The notes under the pieces: model-generated
Seen by the model: only the letters and a program-made list of their open reading frames with translations
What the model was told of the DNA's origin: nothing
Database searches by the model: none
Shown: positions 6,224-46,421 of the stretch, piece by piece
Layout: every line of letters begins with the position of its first letter
Numbering within the stretch: the stretch's first letter is position 1
Source: Bugula neritina
Lineage: Eukaryota > Animalia > Bryozoa
Direction of reading: 5' to 3'
Length of the DNA: 64,000 nucleotides
NCBI GenBank assembly: GCA_964035545.1
Contig: OZ037767.1
Coordinates: 28,536,628-28,600,627 of the forward strand
Program-made: the position numbers and the translations under genes

Positions 6224-6290
6224 TAGACTTAGGGTCTATAGTAGACTTAGGGTCTATAGTAGACTTAGGGTCTATAGTAGACTTAAGGGT
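6224..6290. repeat. 18-bp tandem repeat (tagacttagggtctatag), ~3.5 copies
   Basis: Read directly. Confidence 0.85.
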
Positions 6291-9600: not shown

Positions 9601-12600
9601 GACTAGACTATGACGTATACCTTGTGACTAGACTATGACTTACCTTGTGACTAGACCATGACTTACCTTGTGACTAGACCATGACATACCTTGTGACTAG
9701 ACTATGACTTACCTTGTGACTAGACTATGACTTACTTTGTGACTAGACTATGACTTACCTTGTGACTAGACTATGACTTACTTTGTGACTAGACTATGAC
9801 TTACCTTGTGACTAGAGTACTACACTGCCCCTGTAGATATCTATGAAGGAATCTACACAGTCTCAAACTGAATGGTAGACAATGCAGCCACCTCAGCATA
9901 TAGAACTGAGTTTTAGTATCACCTGACTTCTTCAGAGTAGTTAGTAAGTGTTCTGTCAGCCACAGGCGTGGGATAACTTCTGTAAATGTAATATACTTAC
10001 ACATTGGTATAGGTATGTACGCATAGGTATGTAAACTTAGGTATGTACACATAGGTATGTAAACTTGGGTATGTACACATAGGTATATACACGTAGGTAT
10101 GTACACATAGGTATGTACGCATAGGTATGTACACGTAGGTATGTACGCATATTAGTATGATGAGATATATGATATTATATCCAGTAACAAGAAATAAACA
10201 ACTGACATGCACTAAATAGTCAACCAATAATTTAGGTATAAAAGACAAAATCTGATGAGCATATTTTGAGAAGGGAATTTTACCAGCAGCTGAGCTTACA
10301 GGACAAGGAACCATCATCAGGAAGTTGCCTCGGGGTAGAGGGGTGCTGCTCTTCAGGTTACTCCAGAGGTCAAAGGGCACCATCACCCTAGAGTAGGATG
10401 TTACAGTGTTACAGCACAATACAGCTTATATAACTGAACTAAGTCACGATGGTTAAAGAGGAGATAACTCTACAGTCTAGTCAACAAATGGTGTAATTAT
10501 GTTACAGGTAAGATTTCAAGTTAGATGCGAAGTATTAAAAAGTTAATCAGTAAAGAGTAGTCACCTACTTGTCACTCGTCACACATTCCATCTCAAGGGA
10601 TTGGCAGCCTGCTTGTTAGTAAAGTGGAGACAAATTTAAAGTTTTGGTAATTTTTTAATCTATTATAAAATTAAGTGAGCAGTAAAAAATGCTTTGAGAG
10701 TTATCTTCTCTTTGTGAATATAAACTATTGTATTACTGCGTGTATGTCAAATAGTTGTTTCACACAAACCAGAGCTAAGCAGTATAAAAGTAGAGATGCG
10801 ATAGAGGCCTACTTTGAACAATGTTTGAGCACGTCTTTTGTAGCACCAACAGTCATGGACAGGAGCAGGTCAGTGAAGGTCATGCCTAGCAGCATCTTGT
10901 TCTTTAGTAAAAGAGGTAAATTCAAAGTTCTTTCAGACCAAGAGTAGTGAGCTACAAATATATACACAACATGGTTGTACTTAAAGCACAGTTGTGAAAC
11001 TAAAAATGTGGTGTCCACATTGTTATTTATTACCACTGGAATTGTAAGGTTGAGACATGATTACAAGCTGAAGAGTTGCGAGTATAAAGTTGCGACTTTA
11101 ATTGCAGTAACAAATTACAATAAAATCTCAGCTTAATAATTAATTTATTTGTTTACTGAGTGGGTATCATGAGTCCCTAATAACTGTCACACAAAGCTGC
11201 TGATATTTATTGACTTAAATTAAGGAAACTATGAAAAATCAACACCCACAATCATAAGCAAACAGAAAATAATTGTGTTTAATAATTAGTGTCAAACATC
11301 CGCTGCTTCTGGCAACTTCGCCAGCAAACAAACTACGGCCAATCAAACTACAGTTAATCACAATACAGCCAATCAATACGCAGCTACTACTGCCTAAGAT
11401 TCACCTGCAACTGGTGGCTGTCCAGGGTCCACCCTGCTAGAGCTGCAGCTAGGTTCAAGGTTATTCCGCCGCCGTCTCTTTATTAGGAGGTGTAAAAACT
11501 TCATTGGACCAGTTAATAGAAACTGCAAATACACATACAAAGTAATGTACAATAAATAGCTAAAGGAGAACAACTTTATCACACAGGTTTACATTTGATA
11601 GAATAGTACATAATAGTACCTAGTTATACACAGTTTTGATGATGAATCCTTAAGATTGTAACAGCTTACAACTAAAACTATAAAGATTTTTCATGCTTAA
11701 CTCATTTTTTCATAGGTTACTTTTACTGTATTCAATTATTAATAAAATATTCAACTCTGTTATACCATAGACTATGACATGATGATACCAACTCATTGTT
11801 GCTGTTTTACTTTCTAGTCAATATTAAAAAATGTCCTCCAGGCTCCAATTACTATCAAAGTACTGGCTTATAAAGCATTTAAGTGCCTGTTAAGAAGACT
11901 AAGAAAATCTCATTTATTTTCAGCTACTAAAAACTGAACTAAATTATTGGCAGCATTATAAAAATTATAGAAAAAATTATTTATAAACTTTTACATTCCT
12001 AAAAGTTAGCATTTGTTGTTTTTATAAGATCAATATCTCATATAAACATTTATTTTTAACTAGCTTATATTTTAATGTATTTGGTTTCATTTTAAGAAAA
12101 CTCCATAAGCCAACCACTATATCCCTAGCCTTTACCATAGAACTAAAACTAAAAACACTAAAACCTGAGTTGGCAAAATACAGGAGTGTTTCAATATTCA
12201 ATAGTGATTTACCTTAACTAAATGATCATTTCTATGAAAATACTGATCGTGAGCCCGAAATAATATGTTATGAGGATTGGTTAGTGTAAAGGTAAGTATT
12301 TTAGCTAGAGTGACACCATCATACATAGCTCCATGGAACCTCCAAACCAGGACCCTGTCTTGCAGCGTCCCATAACCTACAATTCAAAACTTATGTGAAA
12401 CAAGTACATATTTACACTGTATGTGAATGAGAGCTGGCTTTTAATACAATCCTTTTTACTTCCTCCAGCACTAAAGTACTCAAACTCAATGTTTATACAT
12501 TCTGAGATTTACAAACTGTATATTTGTGATTTAAAATAACAACAAAGTTTTGAACCTAAATTAAAATCATTATCATATAAGAGTAAATATTTGGATTAAA

Positions 12601-13354
12601 GCAAAAGAAATGGTGTTATACTTATAAAATCAAGCATTTGCAAAATTATATGTTAGAAACTGCCAGTAATAATTTAAATTAGAAATCAACTTCCTTTTAC
12701 GGTAGGTATGATATGAAGTTTTAAATTTTCAGGTAAAATTCATGCTAAAAATTTAAACGAGTTTTTTTATAAAAACAAGATTGCCTAAGAGTAATGATAA
12801 ATAAAACATAGCTAAAACTAGCAGCAGCTGAAATCAACATTCATAATTATAACTACTAACTTGTCAATTTGAGTATAAAATCTATATAAATATATTATTA
12901 TACTCACAAGTATAGTATATATATATATATATATGGGTCAGTTTACTTCATTTAGTACACACCAGCAAATTATGACCTAACATTTAAGTTTGCTCCAAAT
13001 CCATTGAAATTTACTATACATGGTATTTTTATGTGCTGGTTTTAATTACGCATAACAGCAAAGGCTGGGAGGGGATTCCCCAACATTAAAGCACAGGTCA
13101 TTGTCATATGCACTTAATATTCTATATGCACGGACCGTTACGAAAAAACCGTAACGGTCCGTAACCAAAACTAGCTGAATAATTAGGGAAAAACTTGGGA
13201 AATGAAACAAAATTAAAAAGAACTTTGATTATTTAGGTGTATTTATTGGTGCTTAACTAGTTTTGGCCAAAAAACCATGCTCATTACCAGCTAAATTGTG
13301 AAAAATAGCTAAAAACTGAAGATTTCGAGTGTGTACTAAATTAAGTAAAATGAC

Positions 13355-13426
<72 letters not shown>

Positions 13427-16400
13427 TATTTTCATTAAGTTTTAAGGATGTCAGCAGCAAGTTAAGGGTTATCCCTAGCCCAGCCACAACCCTTCCAACA
13501 CATATCAAGTACCTGAGGCTATGACAAGTTGCCATAAAGGAGCATCCACTGGAATGCCCTGCCTGGTTTGAGCCTCTAAAAACGTCTGCATATCTGCTTG
13601 ATTTCGAACTGGTTGAGTATGGACCAGCACGTGGCGAGAAAGGGCAAAGTTGGAGTCGTCTACCCAAACTAAAGAACCTCCAGCGATTTCCACTAACTTC
13701 TGCGTGAACTTCGGGAAGTACCTTTCATTGGAATCTATAAGAGATTATATAGCAGTGTGTGTACTCAGGCAATAGCGTAACTAGGTACTTGGAACTAGCA
13801 TTGTACTAAAACAATAGCAAGTAAACCACACTGTCAGTATTTTATTCTAAAATAATATATGCAAGTCTAAATTAATTTCCATCAGCAGAAACATTATACT
13901 ATACTACTAGACAAAGAGAATCAAGTAAATCGGTTACCTGACTTTTTCAGAGAGATTAGTCGCTGCTGAATGGTGTGTATGAGAGCCTCCACGTCTAAAG
14001 ACTTTTCCAGTACCACCACAACGCTGTGAATATTCTTAGTTAGTGTCCTTGAAGGGTCATGACTCATACCTGTAACACCAACAGGTAGCTACTGTAACAC
14101 CAACAGGTAGCTACTGTAACACTAACAGGTAGCTACTGTAACACTAACAGGTAGCTACTGTAACACCAACAGGTCACTACTGTAACACCAACAGGTCACT
14201 ACTATAACACCAACAGGTGCTACTGTAACACCAACAGGTAGCTACTGTAGCACCAACAGGTAGTTACTGTAACACTAACAGGTAGCTACTGTAACACCAA
14301 CAGGTCACTACTGTAACACCAACAGGTAGCCACTGTAACACCAACAGGTGCTACTGTAACACCAACAGGTAGCTACTGTAACACCAACAGGTCACTACTA
14401 TAACACCAACAGGTGCTACTGTAACACCAACAGGTAGCTACTGTAGCACCAACAGGTAGTTACTGTAACACTAACAGGTAGCTACTGTAACACCAACAGG
14501 TCACTACTGTAACACCAACAGGTAGCCACTGTAACACCAACAGGTGCTACTGTAACACCAACAGGTAGCTACTGTAACACCAACAGGTCACTACTGTAAC
14601 ACCAACAGGTAGCTACTGTAACACCAACAGGTCACTACTGTAACACCAACAGGTGCTACTGTAACACCAACAGGTCACTACTGTAACACCAATAGCCGCT
14701 ACTGTAACACCAACAGGTGCTACTGTAACACCAACAGGTAGCTACTGTAACACCAACAGGTGCTACTGTAACACCAACAGGTGCTACTGTAACACCAACA
14801 GGTGCTACTGTAACACCAACAGGTCACTACTGTAACACCAATAGCCGCTACTGTAACACCAACAGGTGCTACTGTAACACCAACAGGTAGCTACTGTAAC
14901 ACCAACAGGTGCTACTGTAACACCAACAGGTGCTACTGTAACACCAACAGGTGCTACTGTAACACCAACAGGTCACTACTGTAACACCAACAGGTCGCTG
15001 CTGCAAACAACTGCTCTAGTAGTAACAGTAATGCACTCACTGAGATACCAGTACACTTTCACCTAGTCTACATATGAGAAGTACTGCTCCTCTAACAACT
15101 GACCAAAGAAGATATGCTATTAGATGAAAAAAGTAAAAAGGGCAACTTCTAACTTTGAAATATTACCTCTTGTTTGATGTAAGGGAGTGAGACTAGCCCG
15201 GATATGATCAGACAAGCAATGAATTATGGGATATGATTGAACAAGCAATGAATTATGTAAGATATTCAAATTTGACGGATACACCTACACAAAGTAAGAC
15301 TGTCGAGAACGTACCAGCTGCTTCTCTCCCACTCTGCATGTTGACTTCTTCAACTTTCACCGCGCCGTTCTCAGCTTTTACCCCCTCTATCAGTGGATTG
15401 CCTTCTGCATCCACCCCAACAGAGGTGTTCCTTTGTCTCTGCAGACGTAGCTCCTTGAAGGTCAAAGGTCGGTCATCCGACACTAAAACAGGTGAGTCAG
15501 TCAGCGTCACCACCTTGTCATAGCAGCTTAACGTGCACATGCTGACTTTGACTAATATTATAAAAACGCTAAAGAAAAATAAAATTTAGTTCTAAATGAT
15601 CGGAAATTTCTTCAGATAATAAAATGAGCATACTTATCCAGAGAGATTCTGTAGGAGTGGCAAACACACGGCAGTGACATTCAAATGCATGTCTACCACA
15701 GGTGCATGGTATGCAGCATAGTAACAGCAGTCTTCTACACACGTATGTCTACAGTATTACATGTATTATACACACGTATGTCTACAGTATTACATGTATT
15801 ATACACACGTATGTCTACAGTATTACATGTATTATACACACGTATGTCTACAGTATTACATGTATTATACACACGTATGTCTACAGTATTACATGTATTA
15901 TACACACGTATGTCTACAGTATCACATGTATTATACACACGTATGTCTACAGTATCACATGTATAAGGTCAAATAGTACCAACTAACTATGCCAAAAACA
16001 GTAAATCCAGTCGAGATATTTTTAGGAAACAGAAATGAGACTAAATAAATGGCAAACTAGCATGATGAGAGAGCATGAAGGAAAAGTATATATTCCTTGC
16101 TATGCTGTATCTCAGTAGTAAGCTTAAATTCAAAACGTTGAGTGTAAGCCGCTCACATAAGAACTGGAAAATTACACTATAAATATTCAGGGTCAAACTA
16201 TAACATGGCTGACATCACCTGTCATTAGCAAACCTATGGTCTTAGTAAAGGGGCATAATATATGTGCGAATTGCATTACCATAGCCAAACAATAAAAAAA
16301 ATTTTAATTCACAATATACTTTGTGAACTTTCAAATACAATTTGAACTGTGAAATAAAAGATTCAGTTTTTAGTTAAAGTTGTTTGATTTCAATTTTTGT

Positions 16401-16658
16401 TGTAAAATGAAATGAAGTTTCATAATTTCTCCTTGTTCACATCAAGACAAATGGAATACACCTTCTCAAGGCATATTTATATGTAACAAGTATGAAATAG
16501 AATCTCACCAAAGGTAGTAGCAGTACCGTAATGGCTATCAGAAAAGGCCAAAGAATGATTGATCCAAGAAAGAAAACGAAGAAAAGCACGGCTGTGTGAT
16601 ACAGGCCGTCTCTGTAGCTATGAATATATGGTGGCAAACCCACTCCAGCAGACGACAT
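6682..16658 (-). CDS. WS/DGAT (wax ester synthase/diacylglycerol acyltransferase)-family protein with N-terminal TM and long S/P-rich C-tail, ~826 aa, 16 exons
   Basis: Exons 16658-16462, 15734-15634, 15551-15315, 14069-13938, 13734-13513, 12376-12213, 11522-11405, 10951-10813, 10387-10284, 9979-9805, 9312-9114, 8537-8433, 8290-8116, 7652-7583, 7136-7017, 6904-6682 give 2481 nt with consistent phases. Motifs: YFPKFTQK, WVDDSNFALSRHV, PLWQL, RFHGAMYDGVTL, WS..LNL..K..GMTFTDLLL, VPFDL, SFDGP, FISYSG. The first donor (16461) and the 10813-10387 junction are uncertain. Confidence 0.8.
7137..7340 (-). repeat. ~30-33-bp minisatellite, ~7 copies, reiterating a 3' splice site
   Basis: Minus-strand unit ttcactgtttctactgtgtag; the last copy's AG is the acceptor of exon 7136-7017. 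Confidence 0.9.
8740..9126 (-). repeat. 33-bp minisatellite, 12 copies, reiterating a 5' splice site
   Basis: Minus-strand unit ATGTCTCAACAG|GTTAGTCTGAGATATG(C/T)TGAC; ctaac seen at 8746+33n up to 9109. The first copy carries the donor of exon 9312-9114. Confidence 0.95.
9565..9816 (-). repeat. 23-bp minisatellite, 11 copies, reiterating a 5' splice site
   Basis: Minus-strand unit TCTAGTCACAAG|GTAAGTCATAG; the first copy is the donor of exon 9979-9805. Confidence 0.95.
10005..10150. repeat. 14-bp minisatellite (taggtatgtacaca-like), ~10 copies, intronic
   Basis: Read directly. Confidence 0.85.
12935..13356. mobile_element. 422-bp non-autonomous TIR element (MITE) inserted in an (AT)n tract
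   Basis: Left end gggtcagtttacttcatttagtacacac and the reverse complement of the right end gggtcattttacttaatttagtacacac match at 26/28. Both flanks are (AT)n and there is no ORF. Superfamily uncertain. Confidence 0.85.
14070..15000 (-). repeat. 21-22-bp minisatellite, ~43 copies, reiterating a 3' splice site
   Basis: Plus-strand unit ctgtaacaccaacaggt(agcta/cacta/gcta) = minus-strand ...cctgttggtgttacag. The last AG (14071-14070) is the acceptor of exon 14069-13938. Variant blocks recur (higher-order structure). Confidence 0.95.
15735..15965 (-). repeat. 33-bp minisatellite, ~7 copies, ending at a 3' splice site
   Basis: Unit tacacacgtatgtctacagtattacatgtatta. The terminal copy reads cgtgtgtAG on the minus strand (acceptor of exon 15734-15634), where internal copies read cgtgtgtat. 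Confidence 0.9.
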
Positions 16659-18639
16659 AGTTGAGACTGTAACACACTACATAGCCTCTACAGATCTCTC
16701 CATCACAACATCTAAAACAAGATGCATGGCACAATGAAGACATCTCGGATAAACTGGACATAAAGATAATAATAGTAAAATGTCAATATAATCTACAAAT
16801 ATAATGCAATACATCAAGAAAACTACAAAGAAATACAGCATTGGTTCTTACCAACATCATTATATGCGTAGATCAACTGAATACAAACATCTAACTGCTG
16901 ACAGCGGCAGCAATATTGATAAAATGTCAGTCTGTTGAAATTAAAAGCTAATGACCAGGTCAATGTATACTAAAATAGTAAAATATAGAGACCGACTATA
17001 AAATCACACTTCTAATGGTGTGATTAGCTGAAACTGAGGGTTGCATAAAGTTAAGTGACGCTTTCTAACCAAACTAATCATTAGTGTTAATGAAGAACAA
17101 ATCTCGGGTTATATAAGATTTGTAAGGATGCATTTGATTGGTCAAATACATAAAATTTTGCAGGCAGTAAAAAGCTTGGTTATGAATAAGATTATTAAAA
17201 ACAAACTTTAAAAATATGTATAAAATCATAAATTACCTGTACAAAATTCCTTAAGAAAGCTTTTTAATATTTTCAAAATTTTCAAATACATGTATAAATC
17301 TACTATATGCTTGCTTAAACTTATTCTAAAAAAAACTATCAAACATTGAGCTCTATAAAAGAAAAAAACTATGAGTAATTTTTTTATTCATTTTTGTTCG
17401 TGAATTTCTTATTCTAAAAAATCTTGTAACAAATATTATGGGTAAAGCTTTTCAACTTTTAGATTTTATGAGCATAAAATACTCAATATTCAGTTTTCTT
17501 GAGCTATAAGTCAAAATTACTGAGCAAAAGCTGCCAGATTAAGATATCCATCTACTCGTCTTATACAATCTGAAGATTCACACACATTGTGAGAACTTAT
17601 TACAGACATGTATATAATGTTGCTAGAAACATATAATTTTATTAGTAACTACGTAATGTAATGAAATGGCTAACAACAAAAGCTCCTTTTTGAATGTGAA
17701 AATAGTTGCAGAGTGTTTATTGCTACATTATGAAAGACTTAGAAATGACACTTCTTGGACTCTATAATGACAGCGCTAACAACTTTCATATTTAATTTGC
17801 AGATGCTTTAGCTTTTTCTTAAGATGCTGATTATCTAGCATTTTCTATTTAGATCATCAGATCGACGTTTTCACATAAGCACAGTCTACGACATACTTGA
17901 AAATGCCTGAATAGCCTATTTTTCTGAAAAATTAATTACTTTATCATATTTGTGTAATACTTTTCTCATACTTCATTGATTTTTAGAGAGGTGAACATTA
18001 CTGCTAAGCAATACAAGATGCTAAACAAAAGGTTACACATGTATAGCAATGTCATAAGTTATCAAGTCTTTTGTTCAACTTAGGCATCAAAAATAACATT
18101 GCAAAATATTTATCTGCAACAATTTTCATAGAAATAAATCAATTCCAGCGTCAGTCTGAGAAAGAGATCCTCTTGCAGGGTGTGTTGAAATGTTATGTAA
18201 ACACTAGCTAAAGGCTATCTAACTGATATGGACTATAATGAATCTAACGAATTATATAAACAATGTAACGGTTTAGAGTTTAGATTGGCAAACAACCAAC
18301 TTGAAGGTGGCTAATGTAGCTTCCAGAAATGAGTTGTAAAAAGTAAGGAACTAAAATCAGCAGACATTTATTCTGCAAAAACCCATCAATGAGCCAACAG
18401 CTTGATATATAACCATTTATCTACCACTTCCTTGCAGAATCATGTTTCACTGAAGTTTATGGCATCAGAGAGGCTTATAAAAGATTAAGTAAAATTTTTT
18501 AACTTATCATACATACATAAAGAAGGTTTTCAACAACAGATATTTATTATCAAATTAATAAATAAAGTATAGTTATTACAGTACAGCCATATGCAGCTTT
18601 GTCATCAAGTAAATGCAGACAAAAAGCCATTTACCAATA

Positions 18640-22400: not shown

Positions 22401-23462
22401 GTTGGGAAGTTTGTTTTCTTATTTAATTTTCAACTGAAAGTTTTTTAGCACAACTTAAAAAGGTTGTCACTTTACTCTATCAAGTGTTAAGCTTATCAAG
22501 ATTATGGCAGTTAAACTTTATCCTAGCTGGTCTTTTATTGCTTAAGCTGAAAGTGAAATAGTATTAGCATGTTTTATTACTTACATATAGATTAGTACCT
22601 TCTCTGCTACCCGAACAGGACAAAGTGGAGATAGGTGAGAATATAGATTAGCACCTTCAGTATTTTACTTGTAATCAAAATAGTGAAATGACTGTAATAA
22701 CTGTAAAATATAATATGTTAAATGTATGTTTAGTATGAGATAAGGTCTAAAATATTAAGACTATTTTAGAGTTTTGGATACAAGGGGCATAACTCCCAAT
22801 CTACCCCATAGCTGTTCTAATCAATAGCTGATGTATTAAGAGTCATAGCAAGAGGTGTATTTTTCCGGAATACAATGACAAAATCCATGACTGCTTTGTA
22901 AATAGCTCTTCCTGGGGTAGCTTACTGATTTTTATAGCCTGATCAAACAATCCTCAAGTGTGCTCAGGCATTCAAGTCTATTCGTCATATTGTTGAAGCA
23001 TCTGCTGTCTTTGTTTTTGAGAGATGGCAATTATAAAGCGTATGCTTAACATAGTATCTTACCAATGCACAACATTTTATACGTTAAGTCAATTTATTGA
23101 TTCAATCAGACAAAGGCATTAGGAAATCAATTAAGATTTCAGATAATGGTGCAAAGCTTTAATTGGCTGTTATATTGTTATTTACCTTACAATCAGGCAT
23201 TGGCACAAGTCACTTCTATATAACATTATACAATATACGTTATTATTACTGTAGCTTGTACGTTGTTGTTAATAGACTCTCTCTATGTTCATTAGTTTGG
23301 CTTACCACTAGGCAGAGGTTAAAGTAGCATCTAGTGTATACATGTACATATTGGGAGTGGGTAATACAACTTCTGGACATTATAGGGTTGATGAGGCAAA
23401 TGGTTGCTTACAAAAGCTGAAACATTACAGCAGACATTGAAGATAAAGTTCTCTAATCGAAT

Positions 23463-26400
23463 ATGGAAATGCTTAAACTGTTTCTACAAACAATACTAGT
23501 GTTCTCTCTTACATGGCGAGATTGTTCCAGCAATCAAGGTGAGTCATACAAAGTTATCAACTCTTGCTTGTATGTAGAATATATTGACTTCCTGCTTTTT
23601 TGTTAAAAACATTCATTTTTCATTTTGATATGCCGTATAACTCTATTTCGCCATTTCTATAAACCTTGGTTATTATAGTAGACACTTATAGTATATCTTT
23701 TCTAGTTCATACTTGTGTAACTGTACATTAAAAAGTTACTATACCAACTAGTACAGTAGATGGCTATCATTATGTAAATAAATCAACACTTCATTTCAGT
23801 ATCAATTTAGCGTAGCATACATAAAACCATTCTTTTTCTCATGCATTGCTTGGATTCAAATGCACTAAGCATACATTTAAGGAGGTGTAGTTGAGTACTA
23901 GCTGAATATTTCCATATTATTATAATGAAGTAAGAATTACAATGTTAGTAGATCTGAGTCACTTGGCTGTGATTTGATTGATTAGTATCAAATGGCAGAA
24001 TCAGAGCTCCTGCTTGACATTAATACCCACAGAAATGCTTCGGTCAACCGCTGAGAGTTTTACTTAATCTTGGGAGCAGAGAAACATTTTTTTTTAAATC
24101 TCAAACTTGTATTCTGTGTTAGTAAAGAATAGGAGGGTTGAACTGCTACACTATAAAATACTGATAACATCTTCTTTATCATTGCATGGCAATTGTGAGA
24201 AAATACACTTCAAACAACACACAACACAAAACATAATAATACTCTGATACTACGAGTTTCAAGTTTAACTAGTTGGGTTGGCTATAAGATCGGATGTTGC
24301 TCAACAATTTCTTCTCTGTTGGGTAAACTGCGTAGTTAGAGAAATTCTTCATTTGCATACTCTGCTTTGTAATCTTTAGAGTTTTGCTACAGAAAAAAAA
24401 TCATCATAAGGGTCGTCCACTCATCTTATAATGATTCAAGGGTTTTCCATCCTTTCTAGATAGTGGTTTTAATGATGAAATTTTGATTCTCTTCAACCCA
24501 CACCTACTTAATCCTACCCTACTTCTACCTCACGTCTACCGAGTATATAAAAGGCCGTAATACTTCTGACTATTTTAATATAAAAACAGAATTGATCAAA
24601 AAGAACCTCTGTTGTTATTTCACCTATGCTTGCAATGTTCACCAGTTTCCCTTTTGGCCTGCCACACCTTAGGAAATCCTCTACCTCCACACGCAGAACA
24701 GTTGTTTCGCAATCCTATCGCCTAGTGTTCATATTTCCAACTACCAACCCCCTTCCCCACATTGACACTAGTAACTTCTTCATTTCACAAAGTCTGGGCT
24801 CAGAATTTGAACCCCTCCTGATGTACTACAATTTGCGGTTATTTTCATCTGTTTGGCTGTCAGAAAAAAATTCAGGGAGTGAATTTTTTCTTTAATTTAA
24901 AATATGTGATGTAAAAAAAGGAGAATAAATAATTAGCTTGAATCTGAGTCTTATACAAAATTGTGCAAATGAAGGTTTATTGCAAAAAATCTAAGTGACA
25001 CCTTAAAATAGTTCTTTTGCTGTAAGACCCTTGCTATCGTGAGAACCAAATCACTCCATGCAACTTATGAAACGGAATGCTATTGAAATAGTTGTTCATT
25101 TAGACTTCAAAATAATAATTATATAGTTTTAAGAACCTGATGTAGAACTACACAATACTGTGTTAATACTAACTACCTATGTTTTCACAGTAATCTATGA
25201 GCTGCAGGAGAATAGGCTTTGTACTGGAACAGGTGTTCACGGCAGTCAGGTGAGCATGCTGTGTGAAATCTCCAACCTATCTGAACTCTGTGCCAATCCA
25301 AACACAGTCCAACTGAAGTGGGTATTTGCCTCCCCTGTCTACCGGAGACCTATCACTGACTCTGACAAGTATAGTAAGTAGAGACTCACTACTTTTCAGT
25401 CTAATAATAGAATCAGGCAATATAGTTGCATAATGAGCCTTGAAAATAATAATATGTCAAACCTAAATTTATAACCAGCTTGGCAGTTATAACAACTTTT
25501 GTCAGTTTTAACAACATACTTTTCGTGTTGGATTTATGTCCCTTGGTTTGGAGGCAGTATTGACTACATAACTCCAGTTTATTTACTTAAAGATCATACT
25601 GCCTTTGATGAATTCTGTAATAATATTGGTATTATTTAGTGAACAATTTACCAGTAAGTATTGTGGCGGTATAAAGTACAACTTGTTTAGTTTGAGCTAA
25701 AATAGAAAACATTGCTATACAGCTATTATTATAAACTTAAATGAAGATGTTGCTATACAGCTAACTACCAAGTTCTTATAAGTTTCTGCTTTTAATCCTA
25801 AATATAAATATTGATCCAAATGAAATGCTTTTACTGCCCAAGTGGTGTATTTCTGTGTGAATTTTCTGCAAGTACTTGCTTAAAAGCTTTAAACCTTTGG
25901 CATTTAGTGACATTTTAAAACGGTGAAAAATATGGCCAACTGTAATTAATATGATATTCTGTTTTCATTTTCTTTCATATTTGGCATGGAAACCCCTTCT
26001 ACAGATGCAAAATACATTATAACTATTGCAATAAAGAGTTCAATCCAATTCAAATGTATTAATGCATTTTATGATAATATACAGGCAGGTATGAAATAAC
26101 AAAAGTAAATGGTTACATTTTAGCATCTATCCACATGTTTATTTACCTGCATGTGGTGAGAGTTTAACTCACGCCTCAAACCAAACTTCATGAATGCAAA
26201 TGATAAAGTAGGCTATTGAATGTCTCCATTAATTCAGCTAAACGTACTATTATAAGCCCAAGAGATACTGTTATGTATTATTAAAGTAAATAATTACTTC
26301 AACTATAAGGGCTAATGACTGGTTTCCCATCAATATGAAGTGCTGAGATTAAGAAGTTCTAGAAAATGCTTCCCAGCTAGCAGGGACCACAGTGTACCAA

Positions 26401-29400
26401 GTTAATAGTTCAAACTATACTCCATAGTCCTACCATTATTCTAAATTACAAGGTTGAAGGTTAAAGTAATAAAAACCTGGCAATTGTAAACCTTTAGCAC
26501 TGGTATTAATTAACTTGTGGTACATCTTAGATTTCTTAGAAATTGCTTCTTATGGGAACTGGTTGCATAAGTTTTCTGTTGGTAAATTTCGATGTGCAGT
26601 TTACACTATCGTTTCTTTTGATTTTCACACTGTTGGTTTCAATAGTTTTAATTTTTAGATTTAAAAATGTGTTTCCATATAAAAAATTAAACAACTGAAA
26701 ACAGAGCAGATTGAAATTTTAATTTCTAATTCCTTGCAAATAGTAATATATGTAGTTCAGACAGACAAACTAATCAGGAGGTCATACTTTCTGTGTGTAC
26801 CAATTAGTTGATTACTGTTATGGTATTAGCTACACCAGCACCAAATCAACTCAATTATTTCATCTATAGAGACTCTCTCGGTCACTAACTGAATGAATAA
26901 ATAAGAATTGTAGCTAAATATACCCACAAAGTATTGAGTATCCTACAAGTACAGCAGTGTTTGTTGAGTTATATATATAGCACCATATATAACTATGTAT
27001 TATAAGTCTTAATCAATGTCTATAACTGAAAATGACATTCAACCATCAGGAAGACTATGTTTTGGTTAAACTAGACTTTGGCAAGTGATTTGAGTTGTCC
27101 TGGTGTTTGTTGGTTGTACCAGTCAGTACATATGTATTATATTATAGCATATGGTTGCATAAATTATTTATTTTGGAGCTAAAATTATCCAAAATAGTAA
27201 ACAAAAATAGTTTTTGAAAGCAGCTTAAAACTGTATGCAGCAAGTCTAACCGTGCTGAGATTAAATACTCTTAAATGTTGAAGTTATTAGCCAAATCTAA
27301 ATAAAGGGAAACTTGTTTTAAATTGTATACATGTTTCAAGAAAATTGAGCTGAAAGTTGTATTCATGAGCCCTCTAATGTAACTAAATCTAGTTTAATAT
27401 ATACATATGTGTCATTAAGGAGTTATCTTGTCATGCTCTCACTCCTGAAGCCCAAAATTTTTAATTTTCTAAAGCTATGCACTCCTTTTCAAGATTGTTT
27501 AATTGTCAGTGATATGCAGGTATATGGGAAGAAGATGGAAGTGATCGCAAGTCATCTGTGTTGAGAATAAATTCAGTAGACCAGGATGAAGATCCGGGAA
27601 TGTATACTTGCAACATTCACTGCGATTCCACCTCCAACCCTGCACTCAGCTATAAGCTGGAGATGTGTGTGCAAGATGCAGCTACTAAACTTAGTGAGAT
27701 CATTTCCTGTTTGTTATGTAATTCATCAGATATTGCCAGAATGTGCCAAGTCAATATTACACTTATGCGTTAGTTTGCCAGCCATTCACAAATTGCACAT
27801 ATTTTAGCTAGAATTTGCTGTTGGTTGTCTCTCCACTTATCTGTCTGTCTTTACTCTGTCTGTCTGCGTGTTTTTATCTACCTCGCTTGTCTAATTTTAG
27901 ACTGCAAGGAGTAAAGAGAAACTTGGTTAATTTCATTTTGGAATTTAAAAGTCTCAATACTACTGCAAGCAAAAATAAAAGTTGCCATTACTCTATAAAA
28001 TTTTATGAATAACTAACTATTGCCTATCATATACCTCAGTTGTTATAGACTATCAGTAACTATGACTATGACTACCAGCTAGTGTGACTGTACCATTGAC
28101 TGAATATGCCAGTAACTGTGACTATACCAGTGACTGTGACTGTATCATTGACTGTGACTATGACTGAACCAGTGAATATACCAATAACTGTGACTATACC
28201 AATGATTATGTATATCTGTATAATTTTAGTATCATGTTCACTCTCGACCGAAGAGGACAGCTGTGTGCACACATTTGGAGATGGCAAGTGTGACGAGAAG
28301 TGTGACTCAGAGTCGGAGTTGTATGACGGAGATGATTGTGACCCCTACAGTGAAGACACTTGCGAAGCTGACTGCTTGAGTACATACAGCAATGGGAAGT
28401 GCGAGACCAGCTGCTCTGGCGCACAGGTGACTTGACTGTGTTAGCCCCAAATATTAGAACTCCCAGATCAATGAATATAGTATTTTTGCACAAAGTTGCA
28501 GCTTTACCTGCTATTTTTACCTACCTTTGTCTTTCTGTCCAAGTATCTATCATTATAAGTAAATTCTAGTGAGAAGTGTCGATTCACTTTGAGCTAGTGG
28601 GTCTAAAGGACCCTTTCAGGACAAAATATCATGTAGTTTACTGCTATAGAAATCCTTCTTGATGCATAGAAAAGAAATATCATTTCATTGTAGTCAAGAT
28701 TCCTGTAGGATGGTAGTGACTGCAGTTATCAAAAAAATTGAAAAATACTGGGCTCTAGATAAGAAATATTTTCAAAAATGTCATATTCACACAGAGATTT
28801 TCATTAAGTTGCATTGTATTATACTATTATATAATATTGTTTATGAGTAGCTGGTAATGCAAATAATTACACAACTTCAATGCCTTGGTTGAGTCTGCTG
28901 CATTTTATGTGTGCTTATATATAAATATGATTGTATTTAATGACATTTTTAAATGTATGTTTTTTGATATTTGTTTAATCTAGTTAGTCGCTATATATAA
29001 TACAGTATCAACTTTATTAAAACAGTGCGGCTTTGACGGTGGGGATTGTCCACCTTCTGCACAATCTGTGCACCGGGAATCCATTGCAGTAGTAGTACCA
29101 GCCAACTATACTGATGACCAGAGAAGGCTGCTCTCTATGCAACTCTCTATGACTCTGTCCACTTTGGTAAAGCAGCATGGGAGGGCAACTCCATGGACAG
29201 CTACTAATAACCAAGGCATACAGAAAATGTACCTCAGTCCGTCAGTATTTCAAGAGGCAGGCAACCAGCTGTAAGTTTTCCAGTCTCTAGCCTCCACATC
29301 TCAATATTCTTATTAGTACAGTAGCTAAGATTGTGGAATTTATACCTGATTCAAAGATGAAAAGATGGGTATTGCACTGTTGTGTATTCTTCATAGGTTT

Positions 29401-31534
29401 CACAGTATTGGACCATTTAGGTGCAGTAAAAGAATGACTTCAGTATGTTCAGCTCTTTAATTGTATTTATAAATTTTGGTGTAAGATGCCAGCTGAACGT
29501 TCCTGAGGGAATTTGATTTTTTGAGATACCTTATTTCTTATCTAGAGCAAAGTCTGTTTTATATTCCTCTGCATCATTGAACTATAACTCCTTTAAGAAA
29601 GTTTTAGTTCATTACTCCAGATTGCCTTTATTTCTGTTGAGCTGTAACTATATTTTGCTTTGGATACTTGTCTAGATTTTTGAGTAAACAAAATGACCAG
29701 TGTGAGAAAATCTGACTGGGAATAATGCAAACACATTGCTCATTGGTGTCAATAAACTATTTGCTGAACAGCCTAGTAAATAAACATGCCTTCAGTTGAC
29801 TGCAGTAATAGTCTTAGTTCCTTTCTCAAAGCTAACTGAGGGGGGTGGACTTAGCTCCCCTAGAAGTTAACAGAGGGAATAGGCTATGAGTATATGCAGG
29901 CCAGGGCTATGTGAACTATTCCCACTTACTCCCAACAATCAGCTGAACATGTGAATATACTTGCCAATGAAAATATTGAATCTTTTATGTTATAGAAGCA
30001 TTTCATTTGCTACTTCTGTGAAAGTTTCCAAGTATTGACTCAACGTGTTGTACCTGGGCTTTGCATTGTAAGACTGTGCAAAAATAAAAGCATTTATAAT
30101 ATGAATTTAGACTCAATTTTTCCAATAACATATTAGTTAATGGTGAGAGATTACTTTTGAACTGATCTAGAATGTTCCACCGGGAATTACACAGGCAGCG
30201 ACATAGCTCCTTTCTCAGGAAATCATCAATTTACTCTTGCTTGCATCATCATTTTGCACTCATTTTCACTAAAAAGAAATCAATACTTTTTTAAAAAAAA
30301 ACAACAATTACAGCTAATAAATAGTTTAGCTATTCTATTCTAATAAAGTTATGTTTAGGGCTTTACCAACCAATAAATGAGTAAAACATTCTTAAGAGGT
30401 TTCTACAATGCTCAGCACAAGCTTCGAGCTTACCATAGCCAACCTGTACCATAGTAGACCTGGTACTATAACCAATCTATCCCATAGCCAGCATGTCCAG
30501 CACGTAGAGTAGGTCGATTATTATGTTTACAATAAAACTAATGTTATTATTTTAGAATATTACTTCATTACACGCTGGTACCTCAGACCTGTGGCAGCTC
30601 CAAGTGTTTTTTCAGAGCTAGAAACGCTGCCAAATACATTTCCCATCACCTGACCAAAAACAACAAGTTTGAAAATAGCACAGTGGCTGTCATAGGAAGT
30701 AAGTGGTGATTCTTTAACATCATAAAACAAGCATCAGCTGCTAGTAGTTGCAGCAGTAATTAATTATTATAGGCAGTTACCAATAGTTGCTCACTTCTAA
30801 AGGTAATACAAATTTAACCATCCCTTTCATAGAACACAGTACTTCAGAAGTCGTCAATATGCATTTTCTTCTATGAAATAAATCTAAGAGCAACGCGTTT
30901 TGCACATTTCCAAATTATTTTGTTTCGTGACCAGTTCACAATCCAAATCAACGGACGTAAATTGAACACCAGAAATAAGACAAGACTAACACTTCAAACT
31001 TGCTAAGAACAGCAATGATCTATTCACTTAACTAATTGTGTGTCACAATAAGCTGTTGTGGTGCAGAAAAACTGTTTCCCTATTTTTTCAGTTAGCAGCA
31101 GTTTAGATGATTGCCCTCAGTCTAAGCCAAGAGATCTGGATCCTTCGTACACCGGCAGTTCACCAAAACTAGACTTTGCGAGAAAGAAGACAACTCTGGA
31201 AACAGACAAGTCCACTAAACTTGGTGTAGGAGAAATAGCAGGAATTTCCATGTGTGGTCTTGCAATAGTTTTACTTATTATTGGTATAGTTGTGGCCTGC
31301 AGGTACAGAAAGATAGCTCTGACTAGAAGTAAATCCCAGTCTATAAACAAGGAGTCTCAAATAAAGGAGTACATAGAAAGTATACCCACAGACCTATCTT
31401 CTGATGGGAATAGTAGTGCGGGTGGAGCCAAGTCCCCCCAATCTTCCACAGCAAGGTCAATAGTATTGAGGGATTCTACTATGCCTTCAAGTGTTACCAA
31501 CATTGAAAAATACAGCTTCGAAGAAGATGTATAG
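23463..31534 (+). CDS. Ig domain + Notch NRR (2 LNR, NOD, NODP) + TM receptor lacking EGF/RAM/ANK, 486 aa (exons 23463-23538, 25191-25373, 27520-27693, 28230-28426, 29026-29270, 30556-30698, 31092-31534)
   Basis: All junctions are GT-AG and phase-consistent (1461 nt). Signal peptide MEMLKLFLQTILVFSLTWRDCSS. Ig motifs VSMLC..LKW..SVLRINSV..DPGMYTC. LNRs CVHTFGDGKCDEKCDSESELYDGDDC and CEADCLSTYSNGKCETSCSGAQCGFDGGDC. NOD-like SIAVVVP..LSMQLSMTLSTLV..PW; NODP-like CGSSKCFFRARNAAKYI. TM IAGISMCGLAIVLLIIGIVVAC followed by RYRK. Confidence 0.85.
28060..28205. repeat. Degenerate 6-bp repeat (GACTGT/GACTAT)n in the intron just before the LNR exon
   Basis: Read directly; explains the VTVT part of ORF 28106-28435. 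Confidence 0.8.
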
Positions 31535-33362: not shown

Positions 33363-35903
33363 TCATTTCCCAAATCTACCTTCAATCTTGCTGAATACTT
33401 TTAGCGCTGCCTGGAGTTTGCGGGCACCAAAGTCCTTCAATGATGGCGCTGATCTGTAATCAAAAGATAGCTACGTTATGACGTGTCACAATAACCTTAT
33501 AAGTTATATATATGATAAGATATAAAAACCTCCAATGATGCTTCAACAATCACAGTAAACTAAACAGCAAATGTCCAAATCTAAGACAATTAGAATATTG
33601 TTGAAAGCTGCTCACATAATTTCTGTTAGCCTCAGTTGCCAAGGGAGATAACCACAGGTACTTGGCACAGAGCCAAATTTCAGCACCATGTCGGGATCGG
33701 GGCACTGAACTCGTTCTGAGAAAGATATAACAGAACAACTACACATATTATTACCACGAGAGAGTTGCTTTTGAAGACTCCAACAATTGCTATAACTTAT
33801 ATTAACGGTGCATCTAAATAAAACATGTGTGAAATAATTAAACTTGGTAGTAGAATTATATATGCAACTCCTATGCAGACTTTAATAGGTTCACATGGTT
33901 TCAATGTAAGAAAGTATCGCCTTTTGTCTTATTAAAAGTAGGTTAGTGAGAGGAGCTGTCTATCTCTAATTACTTAATAAACATAGCCTCGGTTTTAAGA
34001 ACATGGCTATCACATGAAGTTTGTGGTGGTCTGTAGTAGCTCTCAATAAACCACACTTACACTGTCGGTATGTTCACAGCAACATTTATTTAATTTAAGT
34101 AACATTTTGTAACCATATGAATCCACATACTGTATTTTATAAACTGAAACAATAAAAGTGATGCAAACAAATGGAATAGCTAAATTAAATAACATCAAAC
34201 TTATGCAGAACCATATAATTTTATTTGCTGAAACATAATCACAATAATTGATTGATTCCATACAGCTAGTAACCCAAGGTCAGTAAATAAAACCCTTACA
34301 TACTATAAGTAATAATAAAACCCTACCTCTGAGAACTTTGTCTATATAGTCAGGTGTTACATCGCTAGTTGATAACTGGCCCCGTCTTATCAGATGTCCT
34401 ATGTGTTTGGTTACATCGACTAACATCTTAGTGCCGTCCCCTGGTTCCACAATGTTCACATTCAGCTCTGCTGTCTCTTCGCCTGAATAAGTTTACACTC
34501 ACAGCAAACATGTTATTGCAAAGGTGAATCATGTTTGACTAATTTTTCTTAGAATCGAACAAGTACTTTGAAACATGTAATTTGTTAAAATATATTTTTA
34601 TACCCTTCTTTAAATATTTGCCCAAAATCCCACTACTTAATACAATCTTTATGATTATTCATTAATTTTAGCAATAAATGACTTCAAATCTAACTTATTA
34701 AAAAGTAAATTATTTAATTACTATCAATCAAAAAAAGTAGAATTAAATAAAAATTTTAAAAATTTCAATAGCATGAAAAAACTTGACTTTTACTACATAA
34801 TCTATTTGAATAATGAATAAATAAAATATTTATTAAGTTTCTCTAGCTTACCTAAACTTTTGAACATAAATTGGTTTATTCAATCTTACTTACAAAAATG
34901 TAATCTTAAAATTCATAAATATTATTACTGCAAATATGTTTTAGAATACAAACTAGATGAAAATTAAAATGTACCTTTAGTTGATACTGGACAAAGAATA
35001 TTATGAACAGAAACAGTTGGACAGTTACTGGAACCCAGCTTGTTGCTGATGATATGTCGAATTTTCTTTTCCAAATCTAGAATCTCTAATGGTGTCAAAC
35101 CTGCAAATGTGAGCTTGAATAGTAATAATAATAAAATTTAAAGATTTTTCAAACAATGCAAAAACACAATAGCACATTGGTATAGGTTTGCACTATTATT
35201 ATTTATATGTATTCACAAGAGAATGGGTATAATCAAATTGATTATAAAACCTAGTGTCATACACTAATATGAAGCTATGGTTGATTGATTTTTACCTTAT
35301 AGACTGTTATTACAAGTTAAGTAGCACTAAGTTACTGACTAACAGCAACAATTTCATACTTTTAGATACAAAAGACATGAATTATACAATAACTATTACT
35401 ATAAGTATTAGTATTAGACTTAGAGTTAGTACACTTCTTTAAGTTTTAAAAATTTAGGGTAAATACAAACAATGCAAAAGTAAGCCAGTAAGTTAGCTTG
35501 ATGTAATCTCAACAGTTATATCAACAAAATTAGAATCTTGACACTAGCTTCATCTTTGAGACAAACTCAAAGTGAAAGTGAAAGTCAACTCACGTTTTTT
35601 AGAGTAAACGCTAAAATGTTTTGTACCAATAGAATACACTAAGCTCACAACCAAAGCTAAGCTTGCTAAACAATAAGTATCTTCCAAAGCAAGTAGACCA
35701 AGATGAAAAGGTGTTTTCATTCCAGGAAAGCCAAGCTCATCTGCTACGGGAATAGTGTAATATCCCGTTGGAAGCCACTCCAATCCTTTCGTCACATTTT
35801 GGAACTGGAACTTCGAAGCAAATGAGGACCAATACGATCCAATACTGAGAACGAATGTTATTACAGTGTGGCATATGTGCAATAACCATGAGTGAGAATC
35901 CAT
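33363..35903 (-). CDS. NUS1: Dehydrodolichyl diphosphate synthase complex subunit NUS1 (Nogo-B receptor), 260 aa (exons 35903-35594, 35100-34975, 34482-34327, 33715-33616, 33453-33363)
   Basis: Spliced product contains [43 protein letters not shown] and the C-terminal RxG motif (RFGK*). 783 nt, in frame. Confidence 0.92.
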
Positions 35904-37981
35904 AGCAGTCGCGTACAAATATGATATGCAAACTGTAACTGTTAACAAAACAGTAATTTTATGATGAAATGAAATGAAAGTACTTGTACTTCAACTTGTA
36001 GTAGCTGTAGTATAAATTGTCATGTGTGAGTCGCCAAATATTGCCAATTTCGCGTTTCCGCTCAAGGGACCTTGACCTGGTGTTATAAAAGAGCAAACAA
36101 CTCCATAATTTTTCCAAGAGAATGCTTGTTTTGTTCTATAATATAATATTATAAATTTGCACTTGGTTTTACATTGAAAATATGCTTCTAAGGTACATGT
36201 GTTTTTCCCCATATTCAAATAAAAACTTAATTAAACAAATTATTTAAATTACATTTCATAAGAATATATTTAAATGCCCTATAAGAAAAGTAGCTTTGAT
36301 TGGTCTATTTGCTAAACCGTTATGTTTTAACCTAAAAAGTACTCACCAATGACGTAATATTATGTTAGACAAATTATTGTTGAAATGTATAATTATACTG
36401 AGTTGTACGTGTCATATACTATCTATATTTTTCATATTAACATTATAAATAATACAAATAAACTAAAAACAGTTATTAAATAACTACAAACTAGCTATAA
36501 AAATGCAATATCTCATCTGCCAGAATAATCAAATATTTCTTAAATGCTATTTTGTTTTTAGACTATATAGATTACAGTTCATATACAATATTTTTGCTTT
36601 TTTTAAGTAGATTAGAATATAATGTATATATACCCTTAGTATATATCCTTAATAGCTGTTAAACGCTGTGCATGTACATTGCCCAAAAAGGCTGCGTTGA
36701 CTACTCATATTTAACAAAGAAAATCTACAATATTTAAATTTCCAATAATTTCAGCTAAACTTCTAGTCTTATGTCTAATCTATGGAGATGCAAAAAAATC
36801 TTAAGAACCTTTTAAATTAGTTTAGTTATAGGCATAATATAATATAAATATATAATATAAATAAAATCAAGTCTTTTGCAAATTACTAAACCAACTTTGC
36901 TCCCTATCCATTCTTTTGAAAATAAAAACTATTAGTAAAATTATCGCGTTGTAACCAAGACTGCATTTGTACATCAGCATTTGAACCAAGCTTTCAGGCT
37001 ATGCTCTCATTTCAAACAGTACTATAGGGCTTAGAGTAACGCTGTAGTTATCACACGTACTCAGTTGCTTTTGGAAAAAATCAGTTGCATGAAAAATAAA
37101 TTAGCAACGCTGGGGTTAAAAAGAAAAATTTTAAAGACTATTTTAAGGAGCATTGGTGATAAACTATGCAAGGCCAAAAATAATTATTGCTCTATCAACT
37201 AGATTCTACCAATATTTATAAACCTTTGTCCTATAAGCAGTTAGCAGTTTAAATATATTTTCTTAAAGGTTATAGCAAGTTCATGCATCAAAGTGGTTTT
37301 TAAATAATAGAGCAAGCAAAGTAATGAAATGCCTGCAATAGTTAAATAGTAAGAATCGGTTACAAAAAAGGGTTTAAGCTACGCGCACTGCAGACAAGCA
37401 AAGTTTTTTTGAACCAATTTTATGATAGTTATAACTCAACATAATGCATTGCTGCAAATAATAAATTTGATTTAGCACGTAGCTCCTACTATAAAAAAAA
37501 ATTTAAAACAAAAGTCCCATAATGAGATTTGACCTGTTGATATTAGGCAGTTAGTTTTTAAGTAAAAATTAATTATAAGATGAAGCACTTAATATTATAT
37601 AAAGTCAATATAAAACTTTAAGACAGCTAAGCCATGGCTTATTGACTAACTATAGGAATTATACATGATTGATGATTGAAAATATATATCTTAGGGTAAA
37701 GATGCAATTTGTTAGTACTTACTTATTAGTTTACTAACAATATATTTACTGCCCTGATATGTATCAATCTCAGCTTTCGGTCTCAAATTAAATATTTTAT
37801 AAAAGTAATCACAGTTTGTGCTCATCAAACAATTGTTTCTAATATGGTTTGCATATATCTAGAAACTTGATTTCATAGCAGCAAATAGTAATACACCAAA
37901 CATTATTTTGGAATCTATAATTATTTGGGTACCTATAATTATGATCTAGAGCAATTGGAAGTTTTGAGTGTACGCCATTGT

Positions 37982-45000: not shown

Positions 45001-46421
45001 ACTGACTTTGTATTTCTTTCTTTCAGTGATGCACTTTTCTTTCTTTCTTTAGTAATCTAGAATAAGTAGTGAGTCAGCTAACTGTAATTGCCTCACAATT
45101 TCTGAGTTTAATGGTTTAAAATGGGTTTTGTTGACTTTTCATCACGACTGAATCATTGGATTTGGCTAATTTATTCACAGGCTATTCAAATGGCTTTCAT
45201 CACACTGAGTAATTCAACTGAAGATTTTATGTAACCAATTAAATGGCCATTCTTTGTGATGTTGTCACGTTCAGATAGATTCTCCTAAGTTACTGCAGAT
45301 GTGTTGGTACAGATTTTAGTCATCTGTTGTGTACTTCTACAATGCAACATAAATCACCTATGCTAGTTAGTAGTTTTCTAGTGGTGGTTTGTGGTTACGA
45401 CTCCTGTAACCTCCTTTGAAGTCAGAGTTGGGTGACTGACCAGGATGCACTGCAGCTGTAAGCCATACTTGCTTCTACACTTCAACACTACTTGGGTGAA
45501 GGTCAAGATTGCCAGACCCACAAAGTTGGAAAACTTTCATCTCAGCTGTCAGAGGAAATGGCGAAGATCTCTGAGTCTGTAGCTCCAATCTGCCTATTTT
45601 CTTAATTACCGCGTGAAGTTTTCTATCACAATAACTTGATGGAAAGTGATAATTCTAGTGTTTTGTTCTCAACTATGTGTGAGTTTCTGTTGGCAATGGT
45701 GAACGCTGTGTGTGTAAATACCAAGTATTAAAGTTGATATTACCTTATTTATATATCCTCAGTCAGATTGCTCTATTAAAGTATCATGTAAGGTGCACAT
45801 GCTTATATGTACTGATAGACTGACTAAAAATAGTTTTAGTACCACAATAGTAGCCCAGTGAGCAAAAGCAAGGTAATAATTTTAAGTTAGTTATATAGTT
45901 GAAGTTTAAATAATTATAGCAGATATATAAAATTAATATTTTAATAGAGTGCTCAATTTTAGAAATTTTATTTTTCAACCAAGAACACAGTGTATTGCAT
46001 TAAAGGATGGGGATTTTTAATTTGCTATCATGTTGAATTTATTTTTATTATATTTTGATGAAATAAACTGATGAGGCTACCCATAGTCTTACAGAGCTGT
46101 GTTAGACTGGAATACTTCACTTGACTTACTCTCATTTGTGACTCAAAAATTGCATTCAAAGATATGGCAATTTTTATAGCAAATACTAATTACTAGCTTT
46201 TCACTGACTGACTTGTAACAACAATGGTTGTGTTTAGATGCCCATTGTTGCCCTGTTTAGTATACATATTGATTAGGTGAATTCATCATAACTCAAATCA
46301 TTTATTTACATCTCATTGTGTGACACACAAACTACTTCACTCTTGTCACTCGTCTAACATAGTCAAGTTTTTCCATCACTCCAGCAAGTTGTTTTTCTCT
46401 GACCAACTTTAGAGGTACAGA

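What the first reader, a model, noticed from the sequence alone, without database searches (positions are those of the whole stretch)
23463..31534. Natural 'synNotch'-like receptor: Ig domain on a Notch mechanosensitive NRR with a non-Notch tail
Seen: a clean 7-exon, 486-aa ORF ordered SP, Ig, LNR, LNR, NOD-like, NODP-like, stalk, TM, 77-aa tail. The NOD and NODP segments align by eye with Notch1 (TLVVVV/FLRELSRVLHTNV vs SIAVVV/LSMQLSMTLSTLV; C..SQCFQSATDVAAFL vs CGSSKCFFRARNAAKYI). There are no EGF repeats, no RAM WxP and no ankyrin repeats, and a convergent NUS1 gene follows, leaving no room for a Notch intracellular domain. Knowledge: the LNR+HD unit is the force-gated switch hiding the ADAM S2 site before gamma-secretase cleavage; engineered synNotch swaps an antibody Ig module and new tail onto this core. 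I know of no described natural protein with this architecture. Inference: a contact- or force-triggered proteolytic receptor with a new ligand and CSL-independent output, produced by exon shuffling (the Ig/LNR boundary is a phase-1 intron).
Basis: partly seen in the sequence, partly recalled or inferred. Interest (0 to 1): 0.92.

Follow-up and report, generated by a model that had tools for sequence, protein, structure and literature searches.

The report
Bryozoan Ig receptor on Notch remnant
Moss animals (bryozoans) have a real, expressed surface receptor that joins an antibody-like head to two-thirds of Notch's force-sensing switch and a new short tail; I found no description of it, but the switch looks rebuilt and possibly locked, so it may not work like Notch.

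Summary
The gene is real: 7 exons, 486 aa, single copy. Five junctions are seen directly in RNA contigs from four studies, and the sixth is supported by a loose end. A Watersipora subatra orthologue (XP_067946198.1, 40% identity) has the same exon phases, neighbours and all 20 ectodomain cysteines. Order: signal peptide, Ig, two LNRs, SEA-like HD, 46-aa stalk, TM, 77-aa tail; no EGF, RAM or ankyrin. A complete Notch gene lies elsewhere. Notch origin is well supported: collinear match to Notch1 LNR-B/LNR-C/HD-N (E 1e-15), HD-like fold, and two introns at the positions of human NOTCH1 introns 26 and 27. But this is not an intact NRR. LNR-A and the Leu plug over S2 are missing, there is no furin site, LNR-B lost one cysteine, and a new conserved cysteine lies 9 residues past the S2-like position. 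If all cysteines pair within the chain, cap and stalk are stapled and pulling would bypass the switch. Best guess (0.45): an Ig adhesion/recognition receptor on a closed Notch-derived pedestal. A true synNotch-like switch: 0.3. No paper found describing it, and the scan's notes (this genome only) show no earlier finding of it.

The parts
23463..23538 (+). Exon 1: start codon and signal-peptide-like segment (aa 1-25)
   Evidence: RNA loose end matches its 3' end; the signal peptide is inferred from hydrophobic pattern, no predictor run
25191..25373 (+). Exon 2: N-half of Ig domain (C36, C50, C59, W69)
   Evidence: weak Ig hits for the orthologue
27520..27693 (+). Exon 3: C-half of Ig domain (D-x-G-x-Y-x-C117, C121, C136)
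   Evidence: Pfam Ig_3 E 0.03; conserved in 3 species; RNA
27666..27668 (+). C136, 11 residues before LNR-B Cys1, the same spacing as Notch1 LNR-A last Cys; candidate partner of C347
   Evidence: pairing is inference
28230..28426 (+). Exon 4: LNR1 (= LNR-B, C147-C181, fifth Cys lost) and most of LNR2 (= LNR-C)
   Evidence: Pfam PF00066 E 2e-9; position-specific HMMs
29026..29270 (+). Exon 5: end of LNR2 and N-half of SEA-like HD (NOD-like); no furin site
30556..30698 (+). Exon 6: C-half of HD (C304-C309, helix 3, last strand); counterpart of human NOTCH1 exon 27
   Evidence: NODP E 0.014; intron positions
30689..30694 (+). V337|I338, position equivalent to the Notch S2 scissile bond
   Evidence: structural alignment of the orthologue model to 3eto 1572-1727; cleavage not shown
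31092..31534 (+). Exon 7: stalk, TM, tail, stop
   Evidence: 5' joint in RNA
31112..31114 (+). C347, conserved extra cysteine 9 residues past the S2-like position
31223..31300 (+). Transmembrane helix (about aa 384-409) ending G-I-V-V-A-C-R, resembling the Notch S3 region
   Evidence: hydropathy; comparison with resident Notch TM; resemblance only
31301..31531 (+). 77-aa Ser-rich tail; conserved RYR, DLSS, KSP-x-SS; no RAM, ANK or conserved C-terminus

Best explanation
A bryozoan type-I membrane receptor that arose from an old partial duplication of Notch (LNR-B through HD, perhaps the TM). An Ig domain replaced the EGF array and LNR-A, and a short Ser-rich tail replaced the Notch intracellular domain. 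Shown: gene, splicing, expression, architecture, conservation, Notch ancestry of LNR-HD. Inferred: the Ig binds a cell-surface or matrix ligand. LNR-B/C and the uncleaved SEA-like HD form a calcium- and disulfide-stabilised pedestal that is normally closed, probably stapled by a new disulfide from C347 to a cysteine of the cap (C136, C147 or C36). It would then act as an adhesion/recognition receptor signalling through phosphorylation or adaptor binding on its tail, with any shedding occurring in the exposed stalk rather than by force-opening of S2.
For: LNR1=B in 4/4 species, LNR2=C in 3/4; LNR-A and the L1482/F1484 plug missing. LNR-B fifth Cys lost in 4/4 while its partner C147 is kept in 4/4. 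Twenty ectodomain Cys conserved one-to-one in both full-length proteins, including C347. With C304-C309 paired as in Notch, every possible intrachain partner of C347 lies N-terminal to the HD. No furin motif. S2-like site 46 aa from the membrane against 25 in resident Notch. Tail has no RAM/ANK but keeps Ser/Pro motifs. The HD fold ties with the membrane-adjacent SEA-like domains of adhesion proteins cadherin-23 and PCDH15.
Against: No disulfide was observed: the tool returns no coordinates, the model lacked the Ig, and the C347 region had pLDDT under 50. C347 could instead form an interchain dimer. C36, C59 and C347 are known from only two species. LNR-B/C and HD are the best-conserved parts (46-57%), as expected if they still gate a site. 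Most SEA-like domains with a structured neighbour behaved as contact-induced switches in chimeras (PMC6586460). In Notch, LNR-B must also be removed for activation.
Confidence: 0.45

Rival explanations
1. Natural synNotch-like switch: ligand pulling on the Ig lifts LNR-B/C off the HD, an ADAM cuts at the S2-like strand, and gamma-secretase releases a CSL-independent tail.
For: HD fold with last strand in Notch register; conserved HD disulfide and acidic LNR calcium motifs; TM end resembles S3 region; SEA-like plus neighbour domains often switch; furin cleavage is dispensable for fly Notch (PMC13436963).
Against: LNR-A and plug absent; extra C347; long exposed stalk; tail only 32% conserved with no recognisable effector; closed packing not reproduced, TM 0.25-0.32, rmsd about 14 A.
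Confidence: 0.3
2. Constitutively or signal-shed protein whose active product is the soluble Ig-LNR-HD ectodomain (decoy or ligand), cut in the basic, poorly conserved stalk; the stub is then cleared by gamma-secretase.
For: Stalk about 40 aa, 24% identical, with basic clusters in both species; ectodomain far better conserved than tail.
Against: Tail keeps conserved motifs and length; no cleavage data.
Confidence: 0.15
3. Modulator of canonical Notch signalling (cis partner or ADAM/gamma-secretase decoy).
For: Notch ancestry; earlier scan notes report other shuffled Notch-pathway modules in this genome (unchecked).
Against: No EGF ligand-binding repeats; HD too diverged to be significant against resident Notch.
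Confidence: 0.07
4. The SEA-like domain is not from Notch; LNRs were joined independently to a cadherin-type membrane-adjacent domain.
For: HD-only sequence tests not significant (hhalign probability under 1%); structural Z ties with cadherin-23 MAD28 (8.3 vs 8.4); resident Notch has different introns.
Against: Collinear B-C-HD alignment with Notch spacing; C-x4/5-C-F-helix motif and NODP hit; both introns match human NOTCH1 exon 27 in codon and phase.
Confidence: 0.03

Closest known systems
Notch receptors (NRR: PDB 3ETO, 2OO4, 4ZLP)
   Same: LNR-B, LNR-C, SEA-like HD with its disulfide, order and spacing; two intron positions of human NOTCH1; TM end similar
   Different: No EGF, no LNR-A or plug, LNR-B lacks one Cys, no furin site, extra stalk Cys, longer stalk, no RAM/ANK/PEST; Ig head
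Engineered synNotch
   Same: Ig-type head on a Notch-derived juxtamembrane core with a foreign tail
   Different: synNotch keeps the complete three-LNR NRR and Notch TM and carries a transcription factor (own knowledge); here the core is truncated and remodelled and gating is unshown
SEA-like proteolytic-switch and adhesion receptors (dystroglycan, PCDH15, cadherin-23, EpCAM, IA-2; PMC6586460)
   Same: Membrane-adjacent ferredoxin-like domain with a structured neighbour; non-Notch output
   Different: Neighbour domains are LNRs and the SEA-like domain descends from Notch
Watersipora subatra XP_067946198.1 ('neurogenic locus notch homolog protein 1-like', automatic name)
   Same: Orthologue: 40% identity, same architecture, exon phases and neighbours
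   Different: Only an annotation record; different C-terminus
Pappalysin and GNPTAB (other LNR proteins)
   Same: Tandem LNRs outside Notch
   Different: No HD; far weaker matches (E 0.01-1); both have their own loci in this genome
Panagrellus redivivus UniRef A0A7E4W0F6 (P0011)
   Same: Two LNRs, HD-like segment, TM, tail without ankyrin
   Different: No Ig or signal peptide in the model; unverified gene model; probably independent

Membership tests
Notch receptor | EGF repeat array | tested here: not met
   No EGF hit in any exon or in the orthologue; RNA joins Ig directly to LNR
Notch receptor | Three LNRs | tested here: not met
   Two, assigned B and C
Notch receptor | HD (NOD/NODP) domain | tested here: met
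   Below Pfam cut-offs, but SEA-like fold matching Notch HD (Z 6.8-8.4; the model's alignment was Notch-rich; the independent Atlas model is also SEA-like) and shared introns
Notch receptor | RAM WxP and ankyrin repeats | tested here: not met
   stop at 31534 and NUS1-like stop at 33363
Notch receptor | Furin S1 site | tested here: not met
   No R-x-K/R-R in either species; resident Notch has one
Notch NRR switch | LNR-A/B hydrophobic plug over S2 | tested here: not met
   Segment replaced by Ig C-terminus and linker; no Leu/Phe at plug positions
Notch NRR switch | LNRs pack on HD in a closed state | tested here: inconclusive
   Model pTM 0.50, LNR pLDDT 55-70; whole-unit TM to NRR 0.25-0.32
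Notch NRR switch | Force- or EDTA-induced ADAM then gamma-secretase cleavage | not testable with these tools
   Needs cell assay
Ig superfamily | B-strand Cys, C-strand Trp, D-x-G-x-Y/F-x-C motif | tested here: met
   C50, W69, C117 conserved; Pfam I-set/Ig_3 E 0.005-0.007, below cut-off; nearly all PDB hits are Ig domains, weak
SEA-like juxtamembrane receptors | Ferredoxin-like domain next to the membrane with a structured neighbour | tested here: met

The most novel reading that the evidence does not exclude
A natural non-Notch receptor family in which Notch's mechanosensitive core was reused under an Ig head and remains a regulated proteolytic switch with a retuned threshold (LNR-A replaced by Ig, possibly a redox-sensitive disulfide latch) and CSL-independent output.
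Probability: 0.3. Interest if true: 0.87.

Novelty: new variant of a known kind. Interest (0 to 1): 0.63.

Why it matters
It shows that the LNR-HD unit, treated as Notch-specific, was split off and kept under purifying selection in another receptor across several species. It is a natural LNR-A deletion with a rewired cysteine pattern, so it gives a direct test of what is needed to keep an NRR closed and how its force threshold is set. It is also a candidate compact core (switching or locked) for synthetic receptors. The architecture is undescribed as far as ten literature searches reach; the function is untested and the family appears lineage-restricted.

Tried and rejected
Annotation artefact or two fused genes: rejected. 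Truncated canonical Notch: rejected, complete Notch on C8. Paralogue family: none found in the genome. Ig donor in the genome: none. Single-sequence AlphaFold failed (pLDDT 31). HD-only sequence or profile searches against PDB, Pfam and Notch HD were not significant. JGI metagenome scan found nothing. I first read C147-S-L as a remnant of the Notch LNR-A Cys-Ser-Leu plug and dropped it: the spacing to the next Cys (8) equals LNR-B Cys1-Cys2 in resident Notch and the Leu varies. Tail tyrosine or PDZ motifs are not conserved. Following the operators' note, the spliced window protein was built only inside scripts and never sent to a search tool; searches used single exons by reference or the Watersipora orthologue. 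So no database search or fold was run on the joined window protein itself. Literature searches found no description; subscription papers are not covered.
Full report
Observation. Seven GT-AG exons (23463-23538, 25191-25373, 27520-27693, 28230-28426, 29026-29270, 30556-30698, 31092-31534; intron phases 1,1,1,0,2,1) give a 486-aa ORF with one TM. Contigs from four RNA-labelled runs of four studies show five junctions exactly. Single contigs carry exons 2-7 together, and their loose 5' end is the end of exon 1 (exon 1 lay outside the 6-kb limit, and the RNA label is the tool's guess, but intron-free joints argue for transcripts). These transcripts differ by about 4-5% from the window. Of the 24 exonic codons whose differences were listed, 17 are synonymous, which indicates purifying selection. 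Two contigs extend about 800 nt beyond 31177; if colinear they end near 31980, before the stop of the convergent NUS1-like gene at 33363. The gene is single copy.

Organism and relatives. The genome is 216 Mb. The best full-length relative is Watersipora subatra XP_067946198.1, 487 aa, 40% identical over 459 columns. It has the same seven exons and phases and the same neighbours, WS/DGAT upstream and a prenyltransferase downstream. The window is therefore a bryozoan, probably Bugula (inference). Five more partial orthologues on short contigs share exon boundaries; one contig carries Ig exon 3, LNR exon 4 and exon 5 in order. Their species are unknown; one set is from marine biofilm metagenomes. 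No relative with this architecture outside this group was found, with limited sensitivity.

Notch ancestry. The genome has a complete Notch on C8 with EGF, three LNRs, NOD, NODP, furin site, WFP and ankyrin. The other two LNR loci are GNPTAB and pappalysin. The orthologue's residues 137-350 match Notch1 NRR structures at E 1e-15, collinearly through LNR-B, LNR-C and HD-N; pappalysin scores only E 0.01. Position-specific profiles assign LNR1 to B in 4/4 species and LNR2 to C in 3/4. The HD alone is not significant by sequence. AlphaFold with a 21-row, Notch-rich alignment gives it a confident ferredoxin-like fold (pLDDT 75-91 over most of it) that aligns to Notch2 HD (Z 8.4), cadherin-23 MAD28 (8.3), PCDH15 (7.6) and Notch1 (6.8, rmsd 2.8 A, 99 residues). 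This is partly circular, but the Atlas's independent model also matches SEA-like and ferredoxin folds. The fold alone does not separate Notch from cadherin; the introns do. Human NOTCH1 exon 27 is 149 bp, c.5019-5167 (PMC5469151, PMC8069012), flanked by a phase-2 intron 12 codons before the first HD Cys and a phase-1 intron 31 codons after the second. That count uses the chain sequence, numbering, and the last 14 residues from my own knowledge. Exon 6 here has phase 2 and 1 with the same distances, 12 and 31. Its length (143 nt; 146 in Watersipora) differs only by the shorter loop between the two Cys. The resident Notch has its introns elsewhere, which suggests an old duplication.

Why it is not simply synNotch. 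(1) LNR-A and the A/B linker are missing. In Notch1, L1482 and F1484 of that linker fill the void next to the S2 strand, and LNR-A plus linker give one of the strongest resistance peaks in pulling simulations, although LNR-B must also be removed for activation (PMC3145759). Mutating this gatekeeper activates fly Notch (PMC13436963). (2) There is no furin motif. (3) The fifth Cys of LNR-B is lost in 4/4 species while its partner C147 is kept. Both full-length proteins have exactly 20 matching ectodomain Cys, including C347, nine residues past the S2-equivalent V337|I338. After the canonical pairs, C36, C59, C121, C136, C147 and C347 remain. If all pair within the chain, C347 must bond to a residue N-terminal of the HD. 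Tension from the Ig would then pass into the stalk around the LNR-HD unit, and an S2 cut would not free the ectodomain. C136 sits 11 residues before LNR-B Cys1, like Notch1 C1480, near where the last strand exits, so C136-C347 with C36-C147 is my preferred pairing. This is inference; an interchain dimer through C347 is the alternative. (4) The S2-like site is 46 aa from the TM against 25 in resident Notch, leaving an unprotected stalk. (5) The model does not reproduce LNR-on-HD packing (Foldseek's top 13 hits are Notch NRRs but TM is 0.25-0.32); this is inconclusive at pTM 0.50. (6) The tail is 32% conserved, Ser-rich, without RAM or ankyrin.

Mechanism. Most likely (0.45) an Ig adhesion/recognition receptor on a closed, probably stapled, Notch-derived pedestal, signalling through tail phosphorylation or adaptors. 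A force-gated switch remains a serious rival (0.3): LNRs and HD are the best-conserved parts (46-57%), the last strand and TM end are in Notch register, and most SEA-like domains with a structured neighbour behaved as contact-induced switches in chimeras (PMC6586460). Lesser rivals: shed ectodomain (0.15), Notch modulator (0.07), non-Notch HD (0.03). Ligand, cleavage and output are all unshown.

Known and new. It fails Notch membership (no EGF, two LNRs, no RAM/ANK) and belongs functionally with SEA-like juxtamembrane receptors. The orthologue exists only as an automatic RefSeq name. I found no paper describing Ig-LNR-HD or any LNR-HD unit outside Notch (open-access only). A Panagrellus protein (P0011) with two LNRs, an HD-like segment (0 of 300 shuffles reach its score), TM and no ankyrin suggests that NRR-only offshoots arose more than once. 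I rate it a new variant of a known kind, interest 0.63.

Noticed in passing
P0011 (Panagrellus redivivus, UniRef A0A7E4W0F6, 411 aa): Two LNRs, HD-like segment, TM and a tail of about 140 aa without ankyrin: possible independent NRR-only Notch offshoot in a nematode; no contig on record.
   Followed up: partly
G000:C8:7289490-7292645 (L011/L012): Canonical Notch NRR of this genome; its HD introns differ from human NOTCH1, whereas the derived gene keeps the human positions.
   Followed up: partly
window 4535-4966 (-) and nearby ORFs 2504-8290 (-): Long exon with an Ig-like Cys/Trp/Y-x-C pattern and no Pfam hit; probably part of another multi-exon receptor gene.
   Followed up: no
window 13508-13744 (-) and about 11000-16700: WS/DGAT-type acyltransferase gene upstream, syntenic in Watersipora (weak Pfam hit).
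   Followed up: partly
window 33363-35990 (-): NUS1-like prenyltransferase, convergent, ends in RFGK-stop.
   Followed up: partly
window 46413-50656 (+): TEAD/scalloped gene (TEA domain E 1.6e-7).
   Followed up: no
window 23432-23465 and L023:9971-10003: The 30 nt before the ATG are visibly conserved between this genome and Watersipora.
   Followed up: no
window 8733-9446 (-): 237-aa ORF with a 13-aa tandem repeat; may be a DNA tandem repeat read in frame.
   Followed up: no
all four runs: Transcripts differ by about 4-5% from the window genome, suggesting a cryptic sister species.
   Followed up: no
G000:C5:1024940 (-) and G000:C9:8569206 (-): The other LNR loci are GNPTAB and pappalysin orthologues.
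   Followed up: yes
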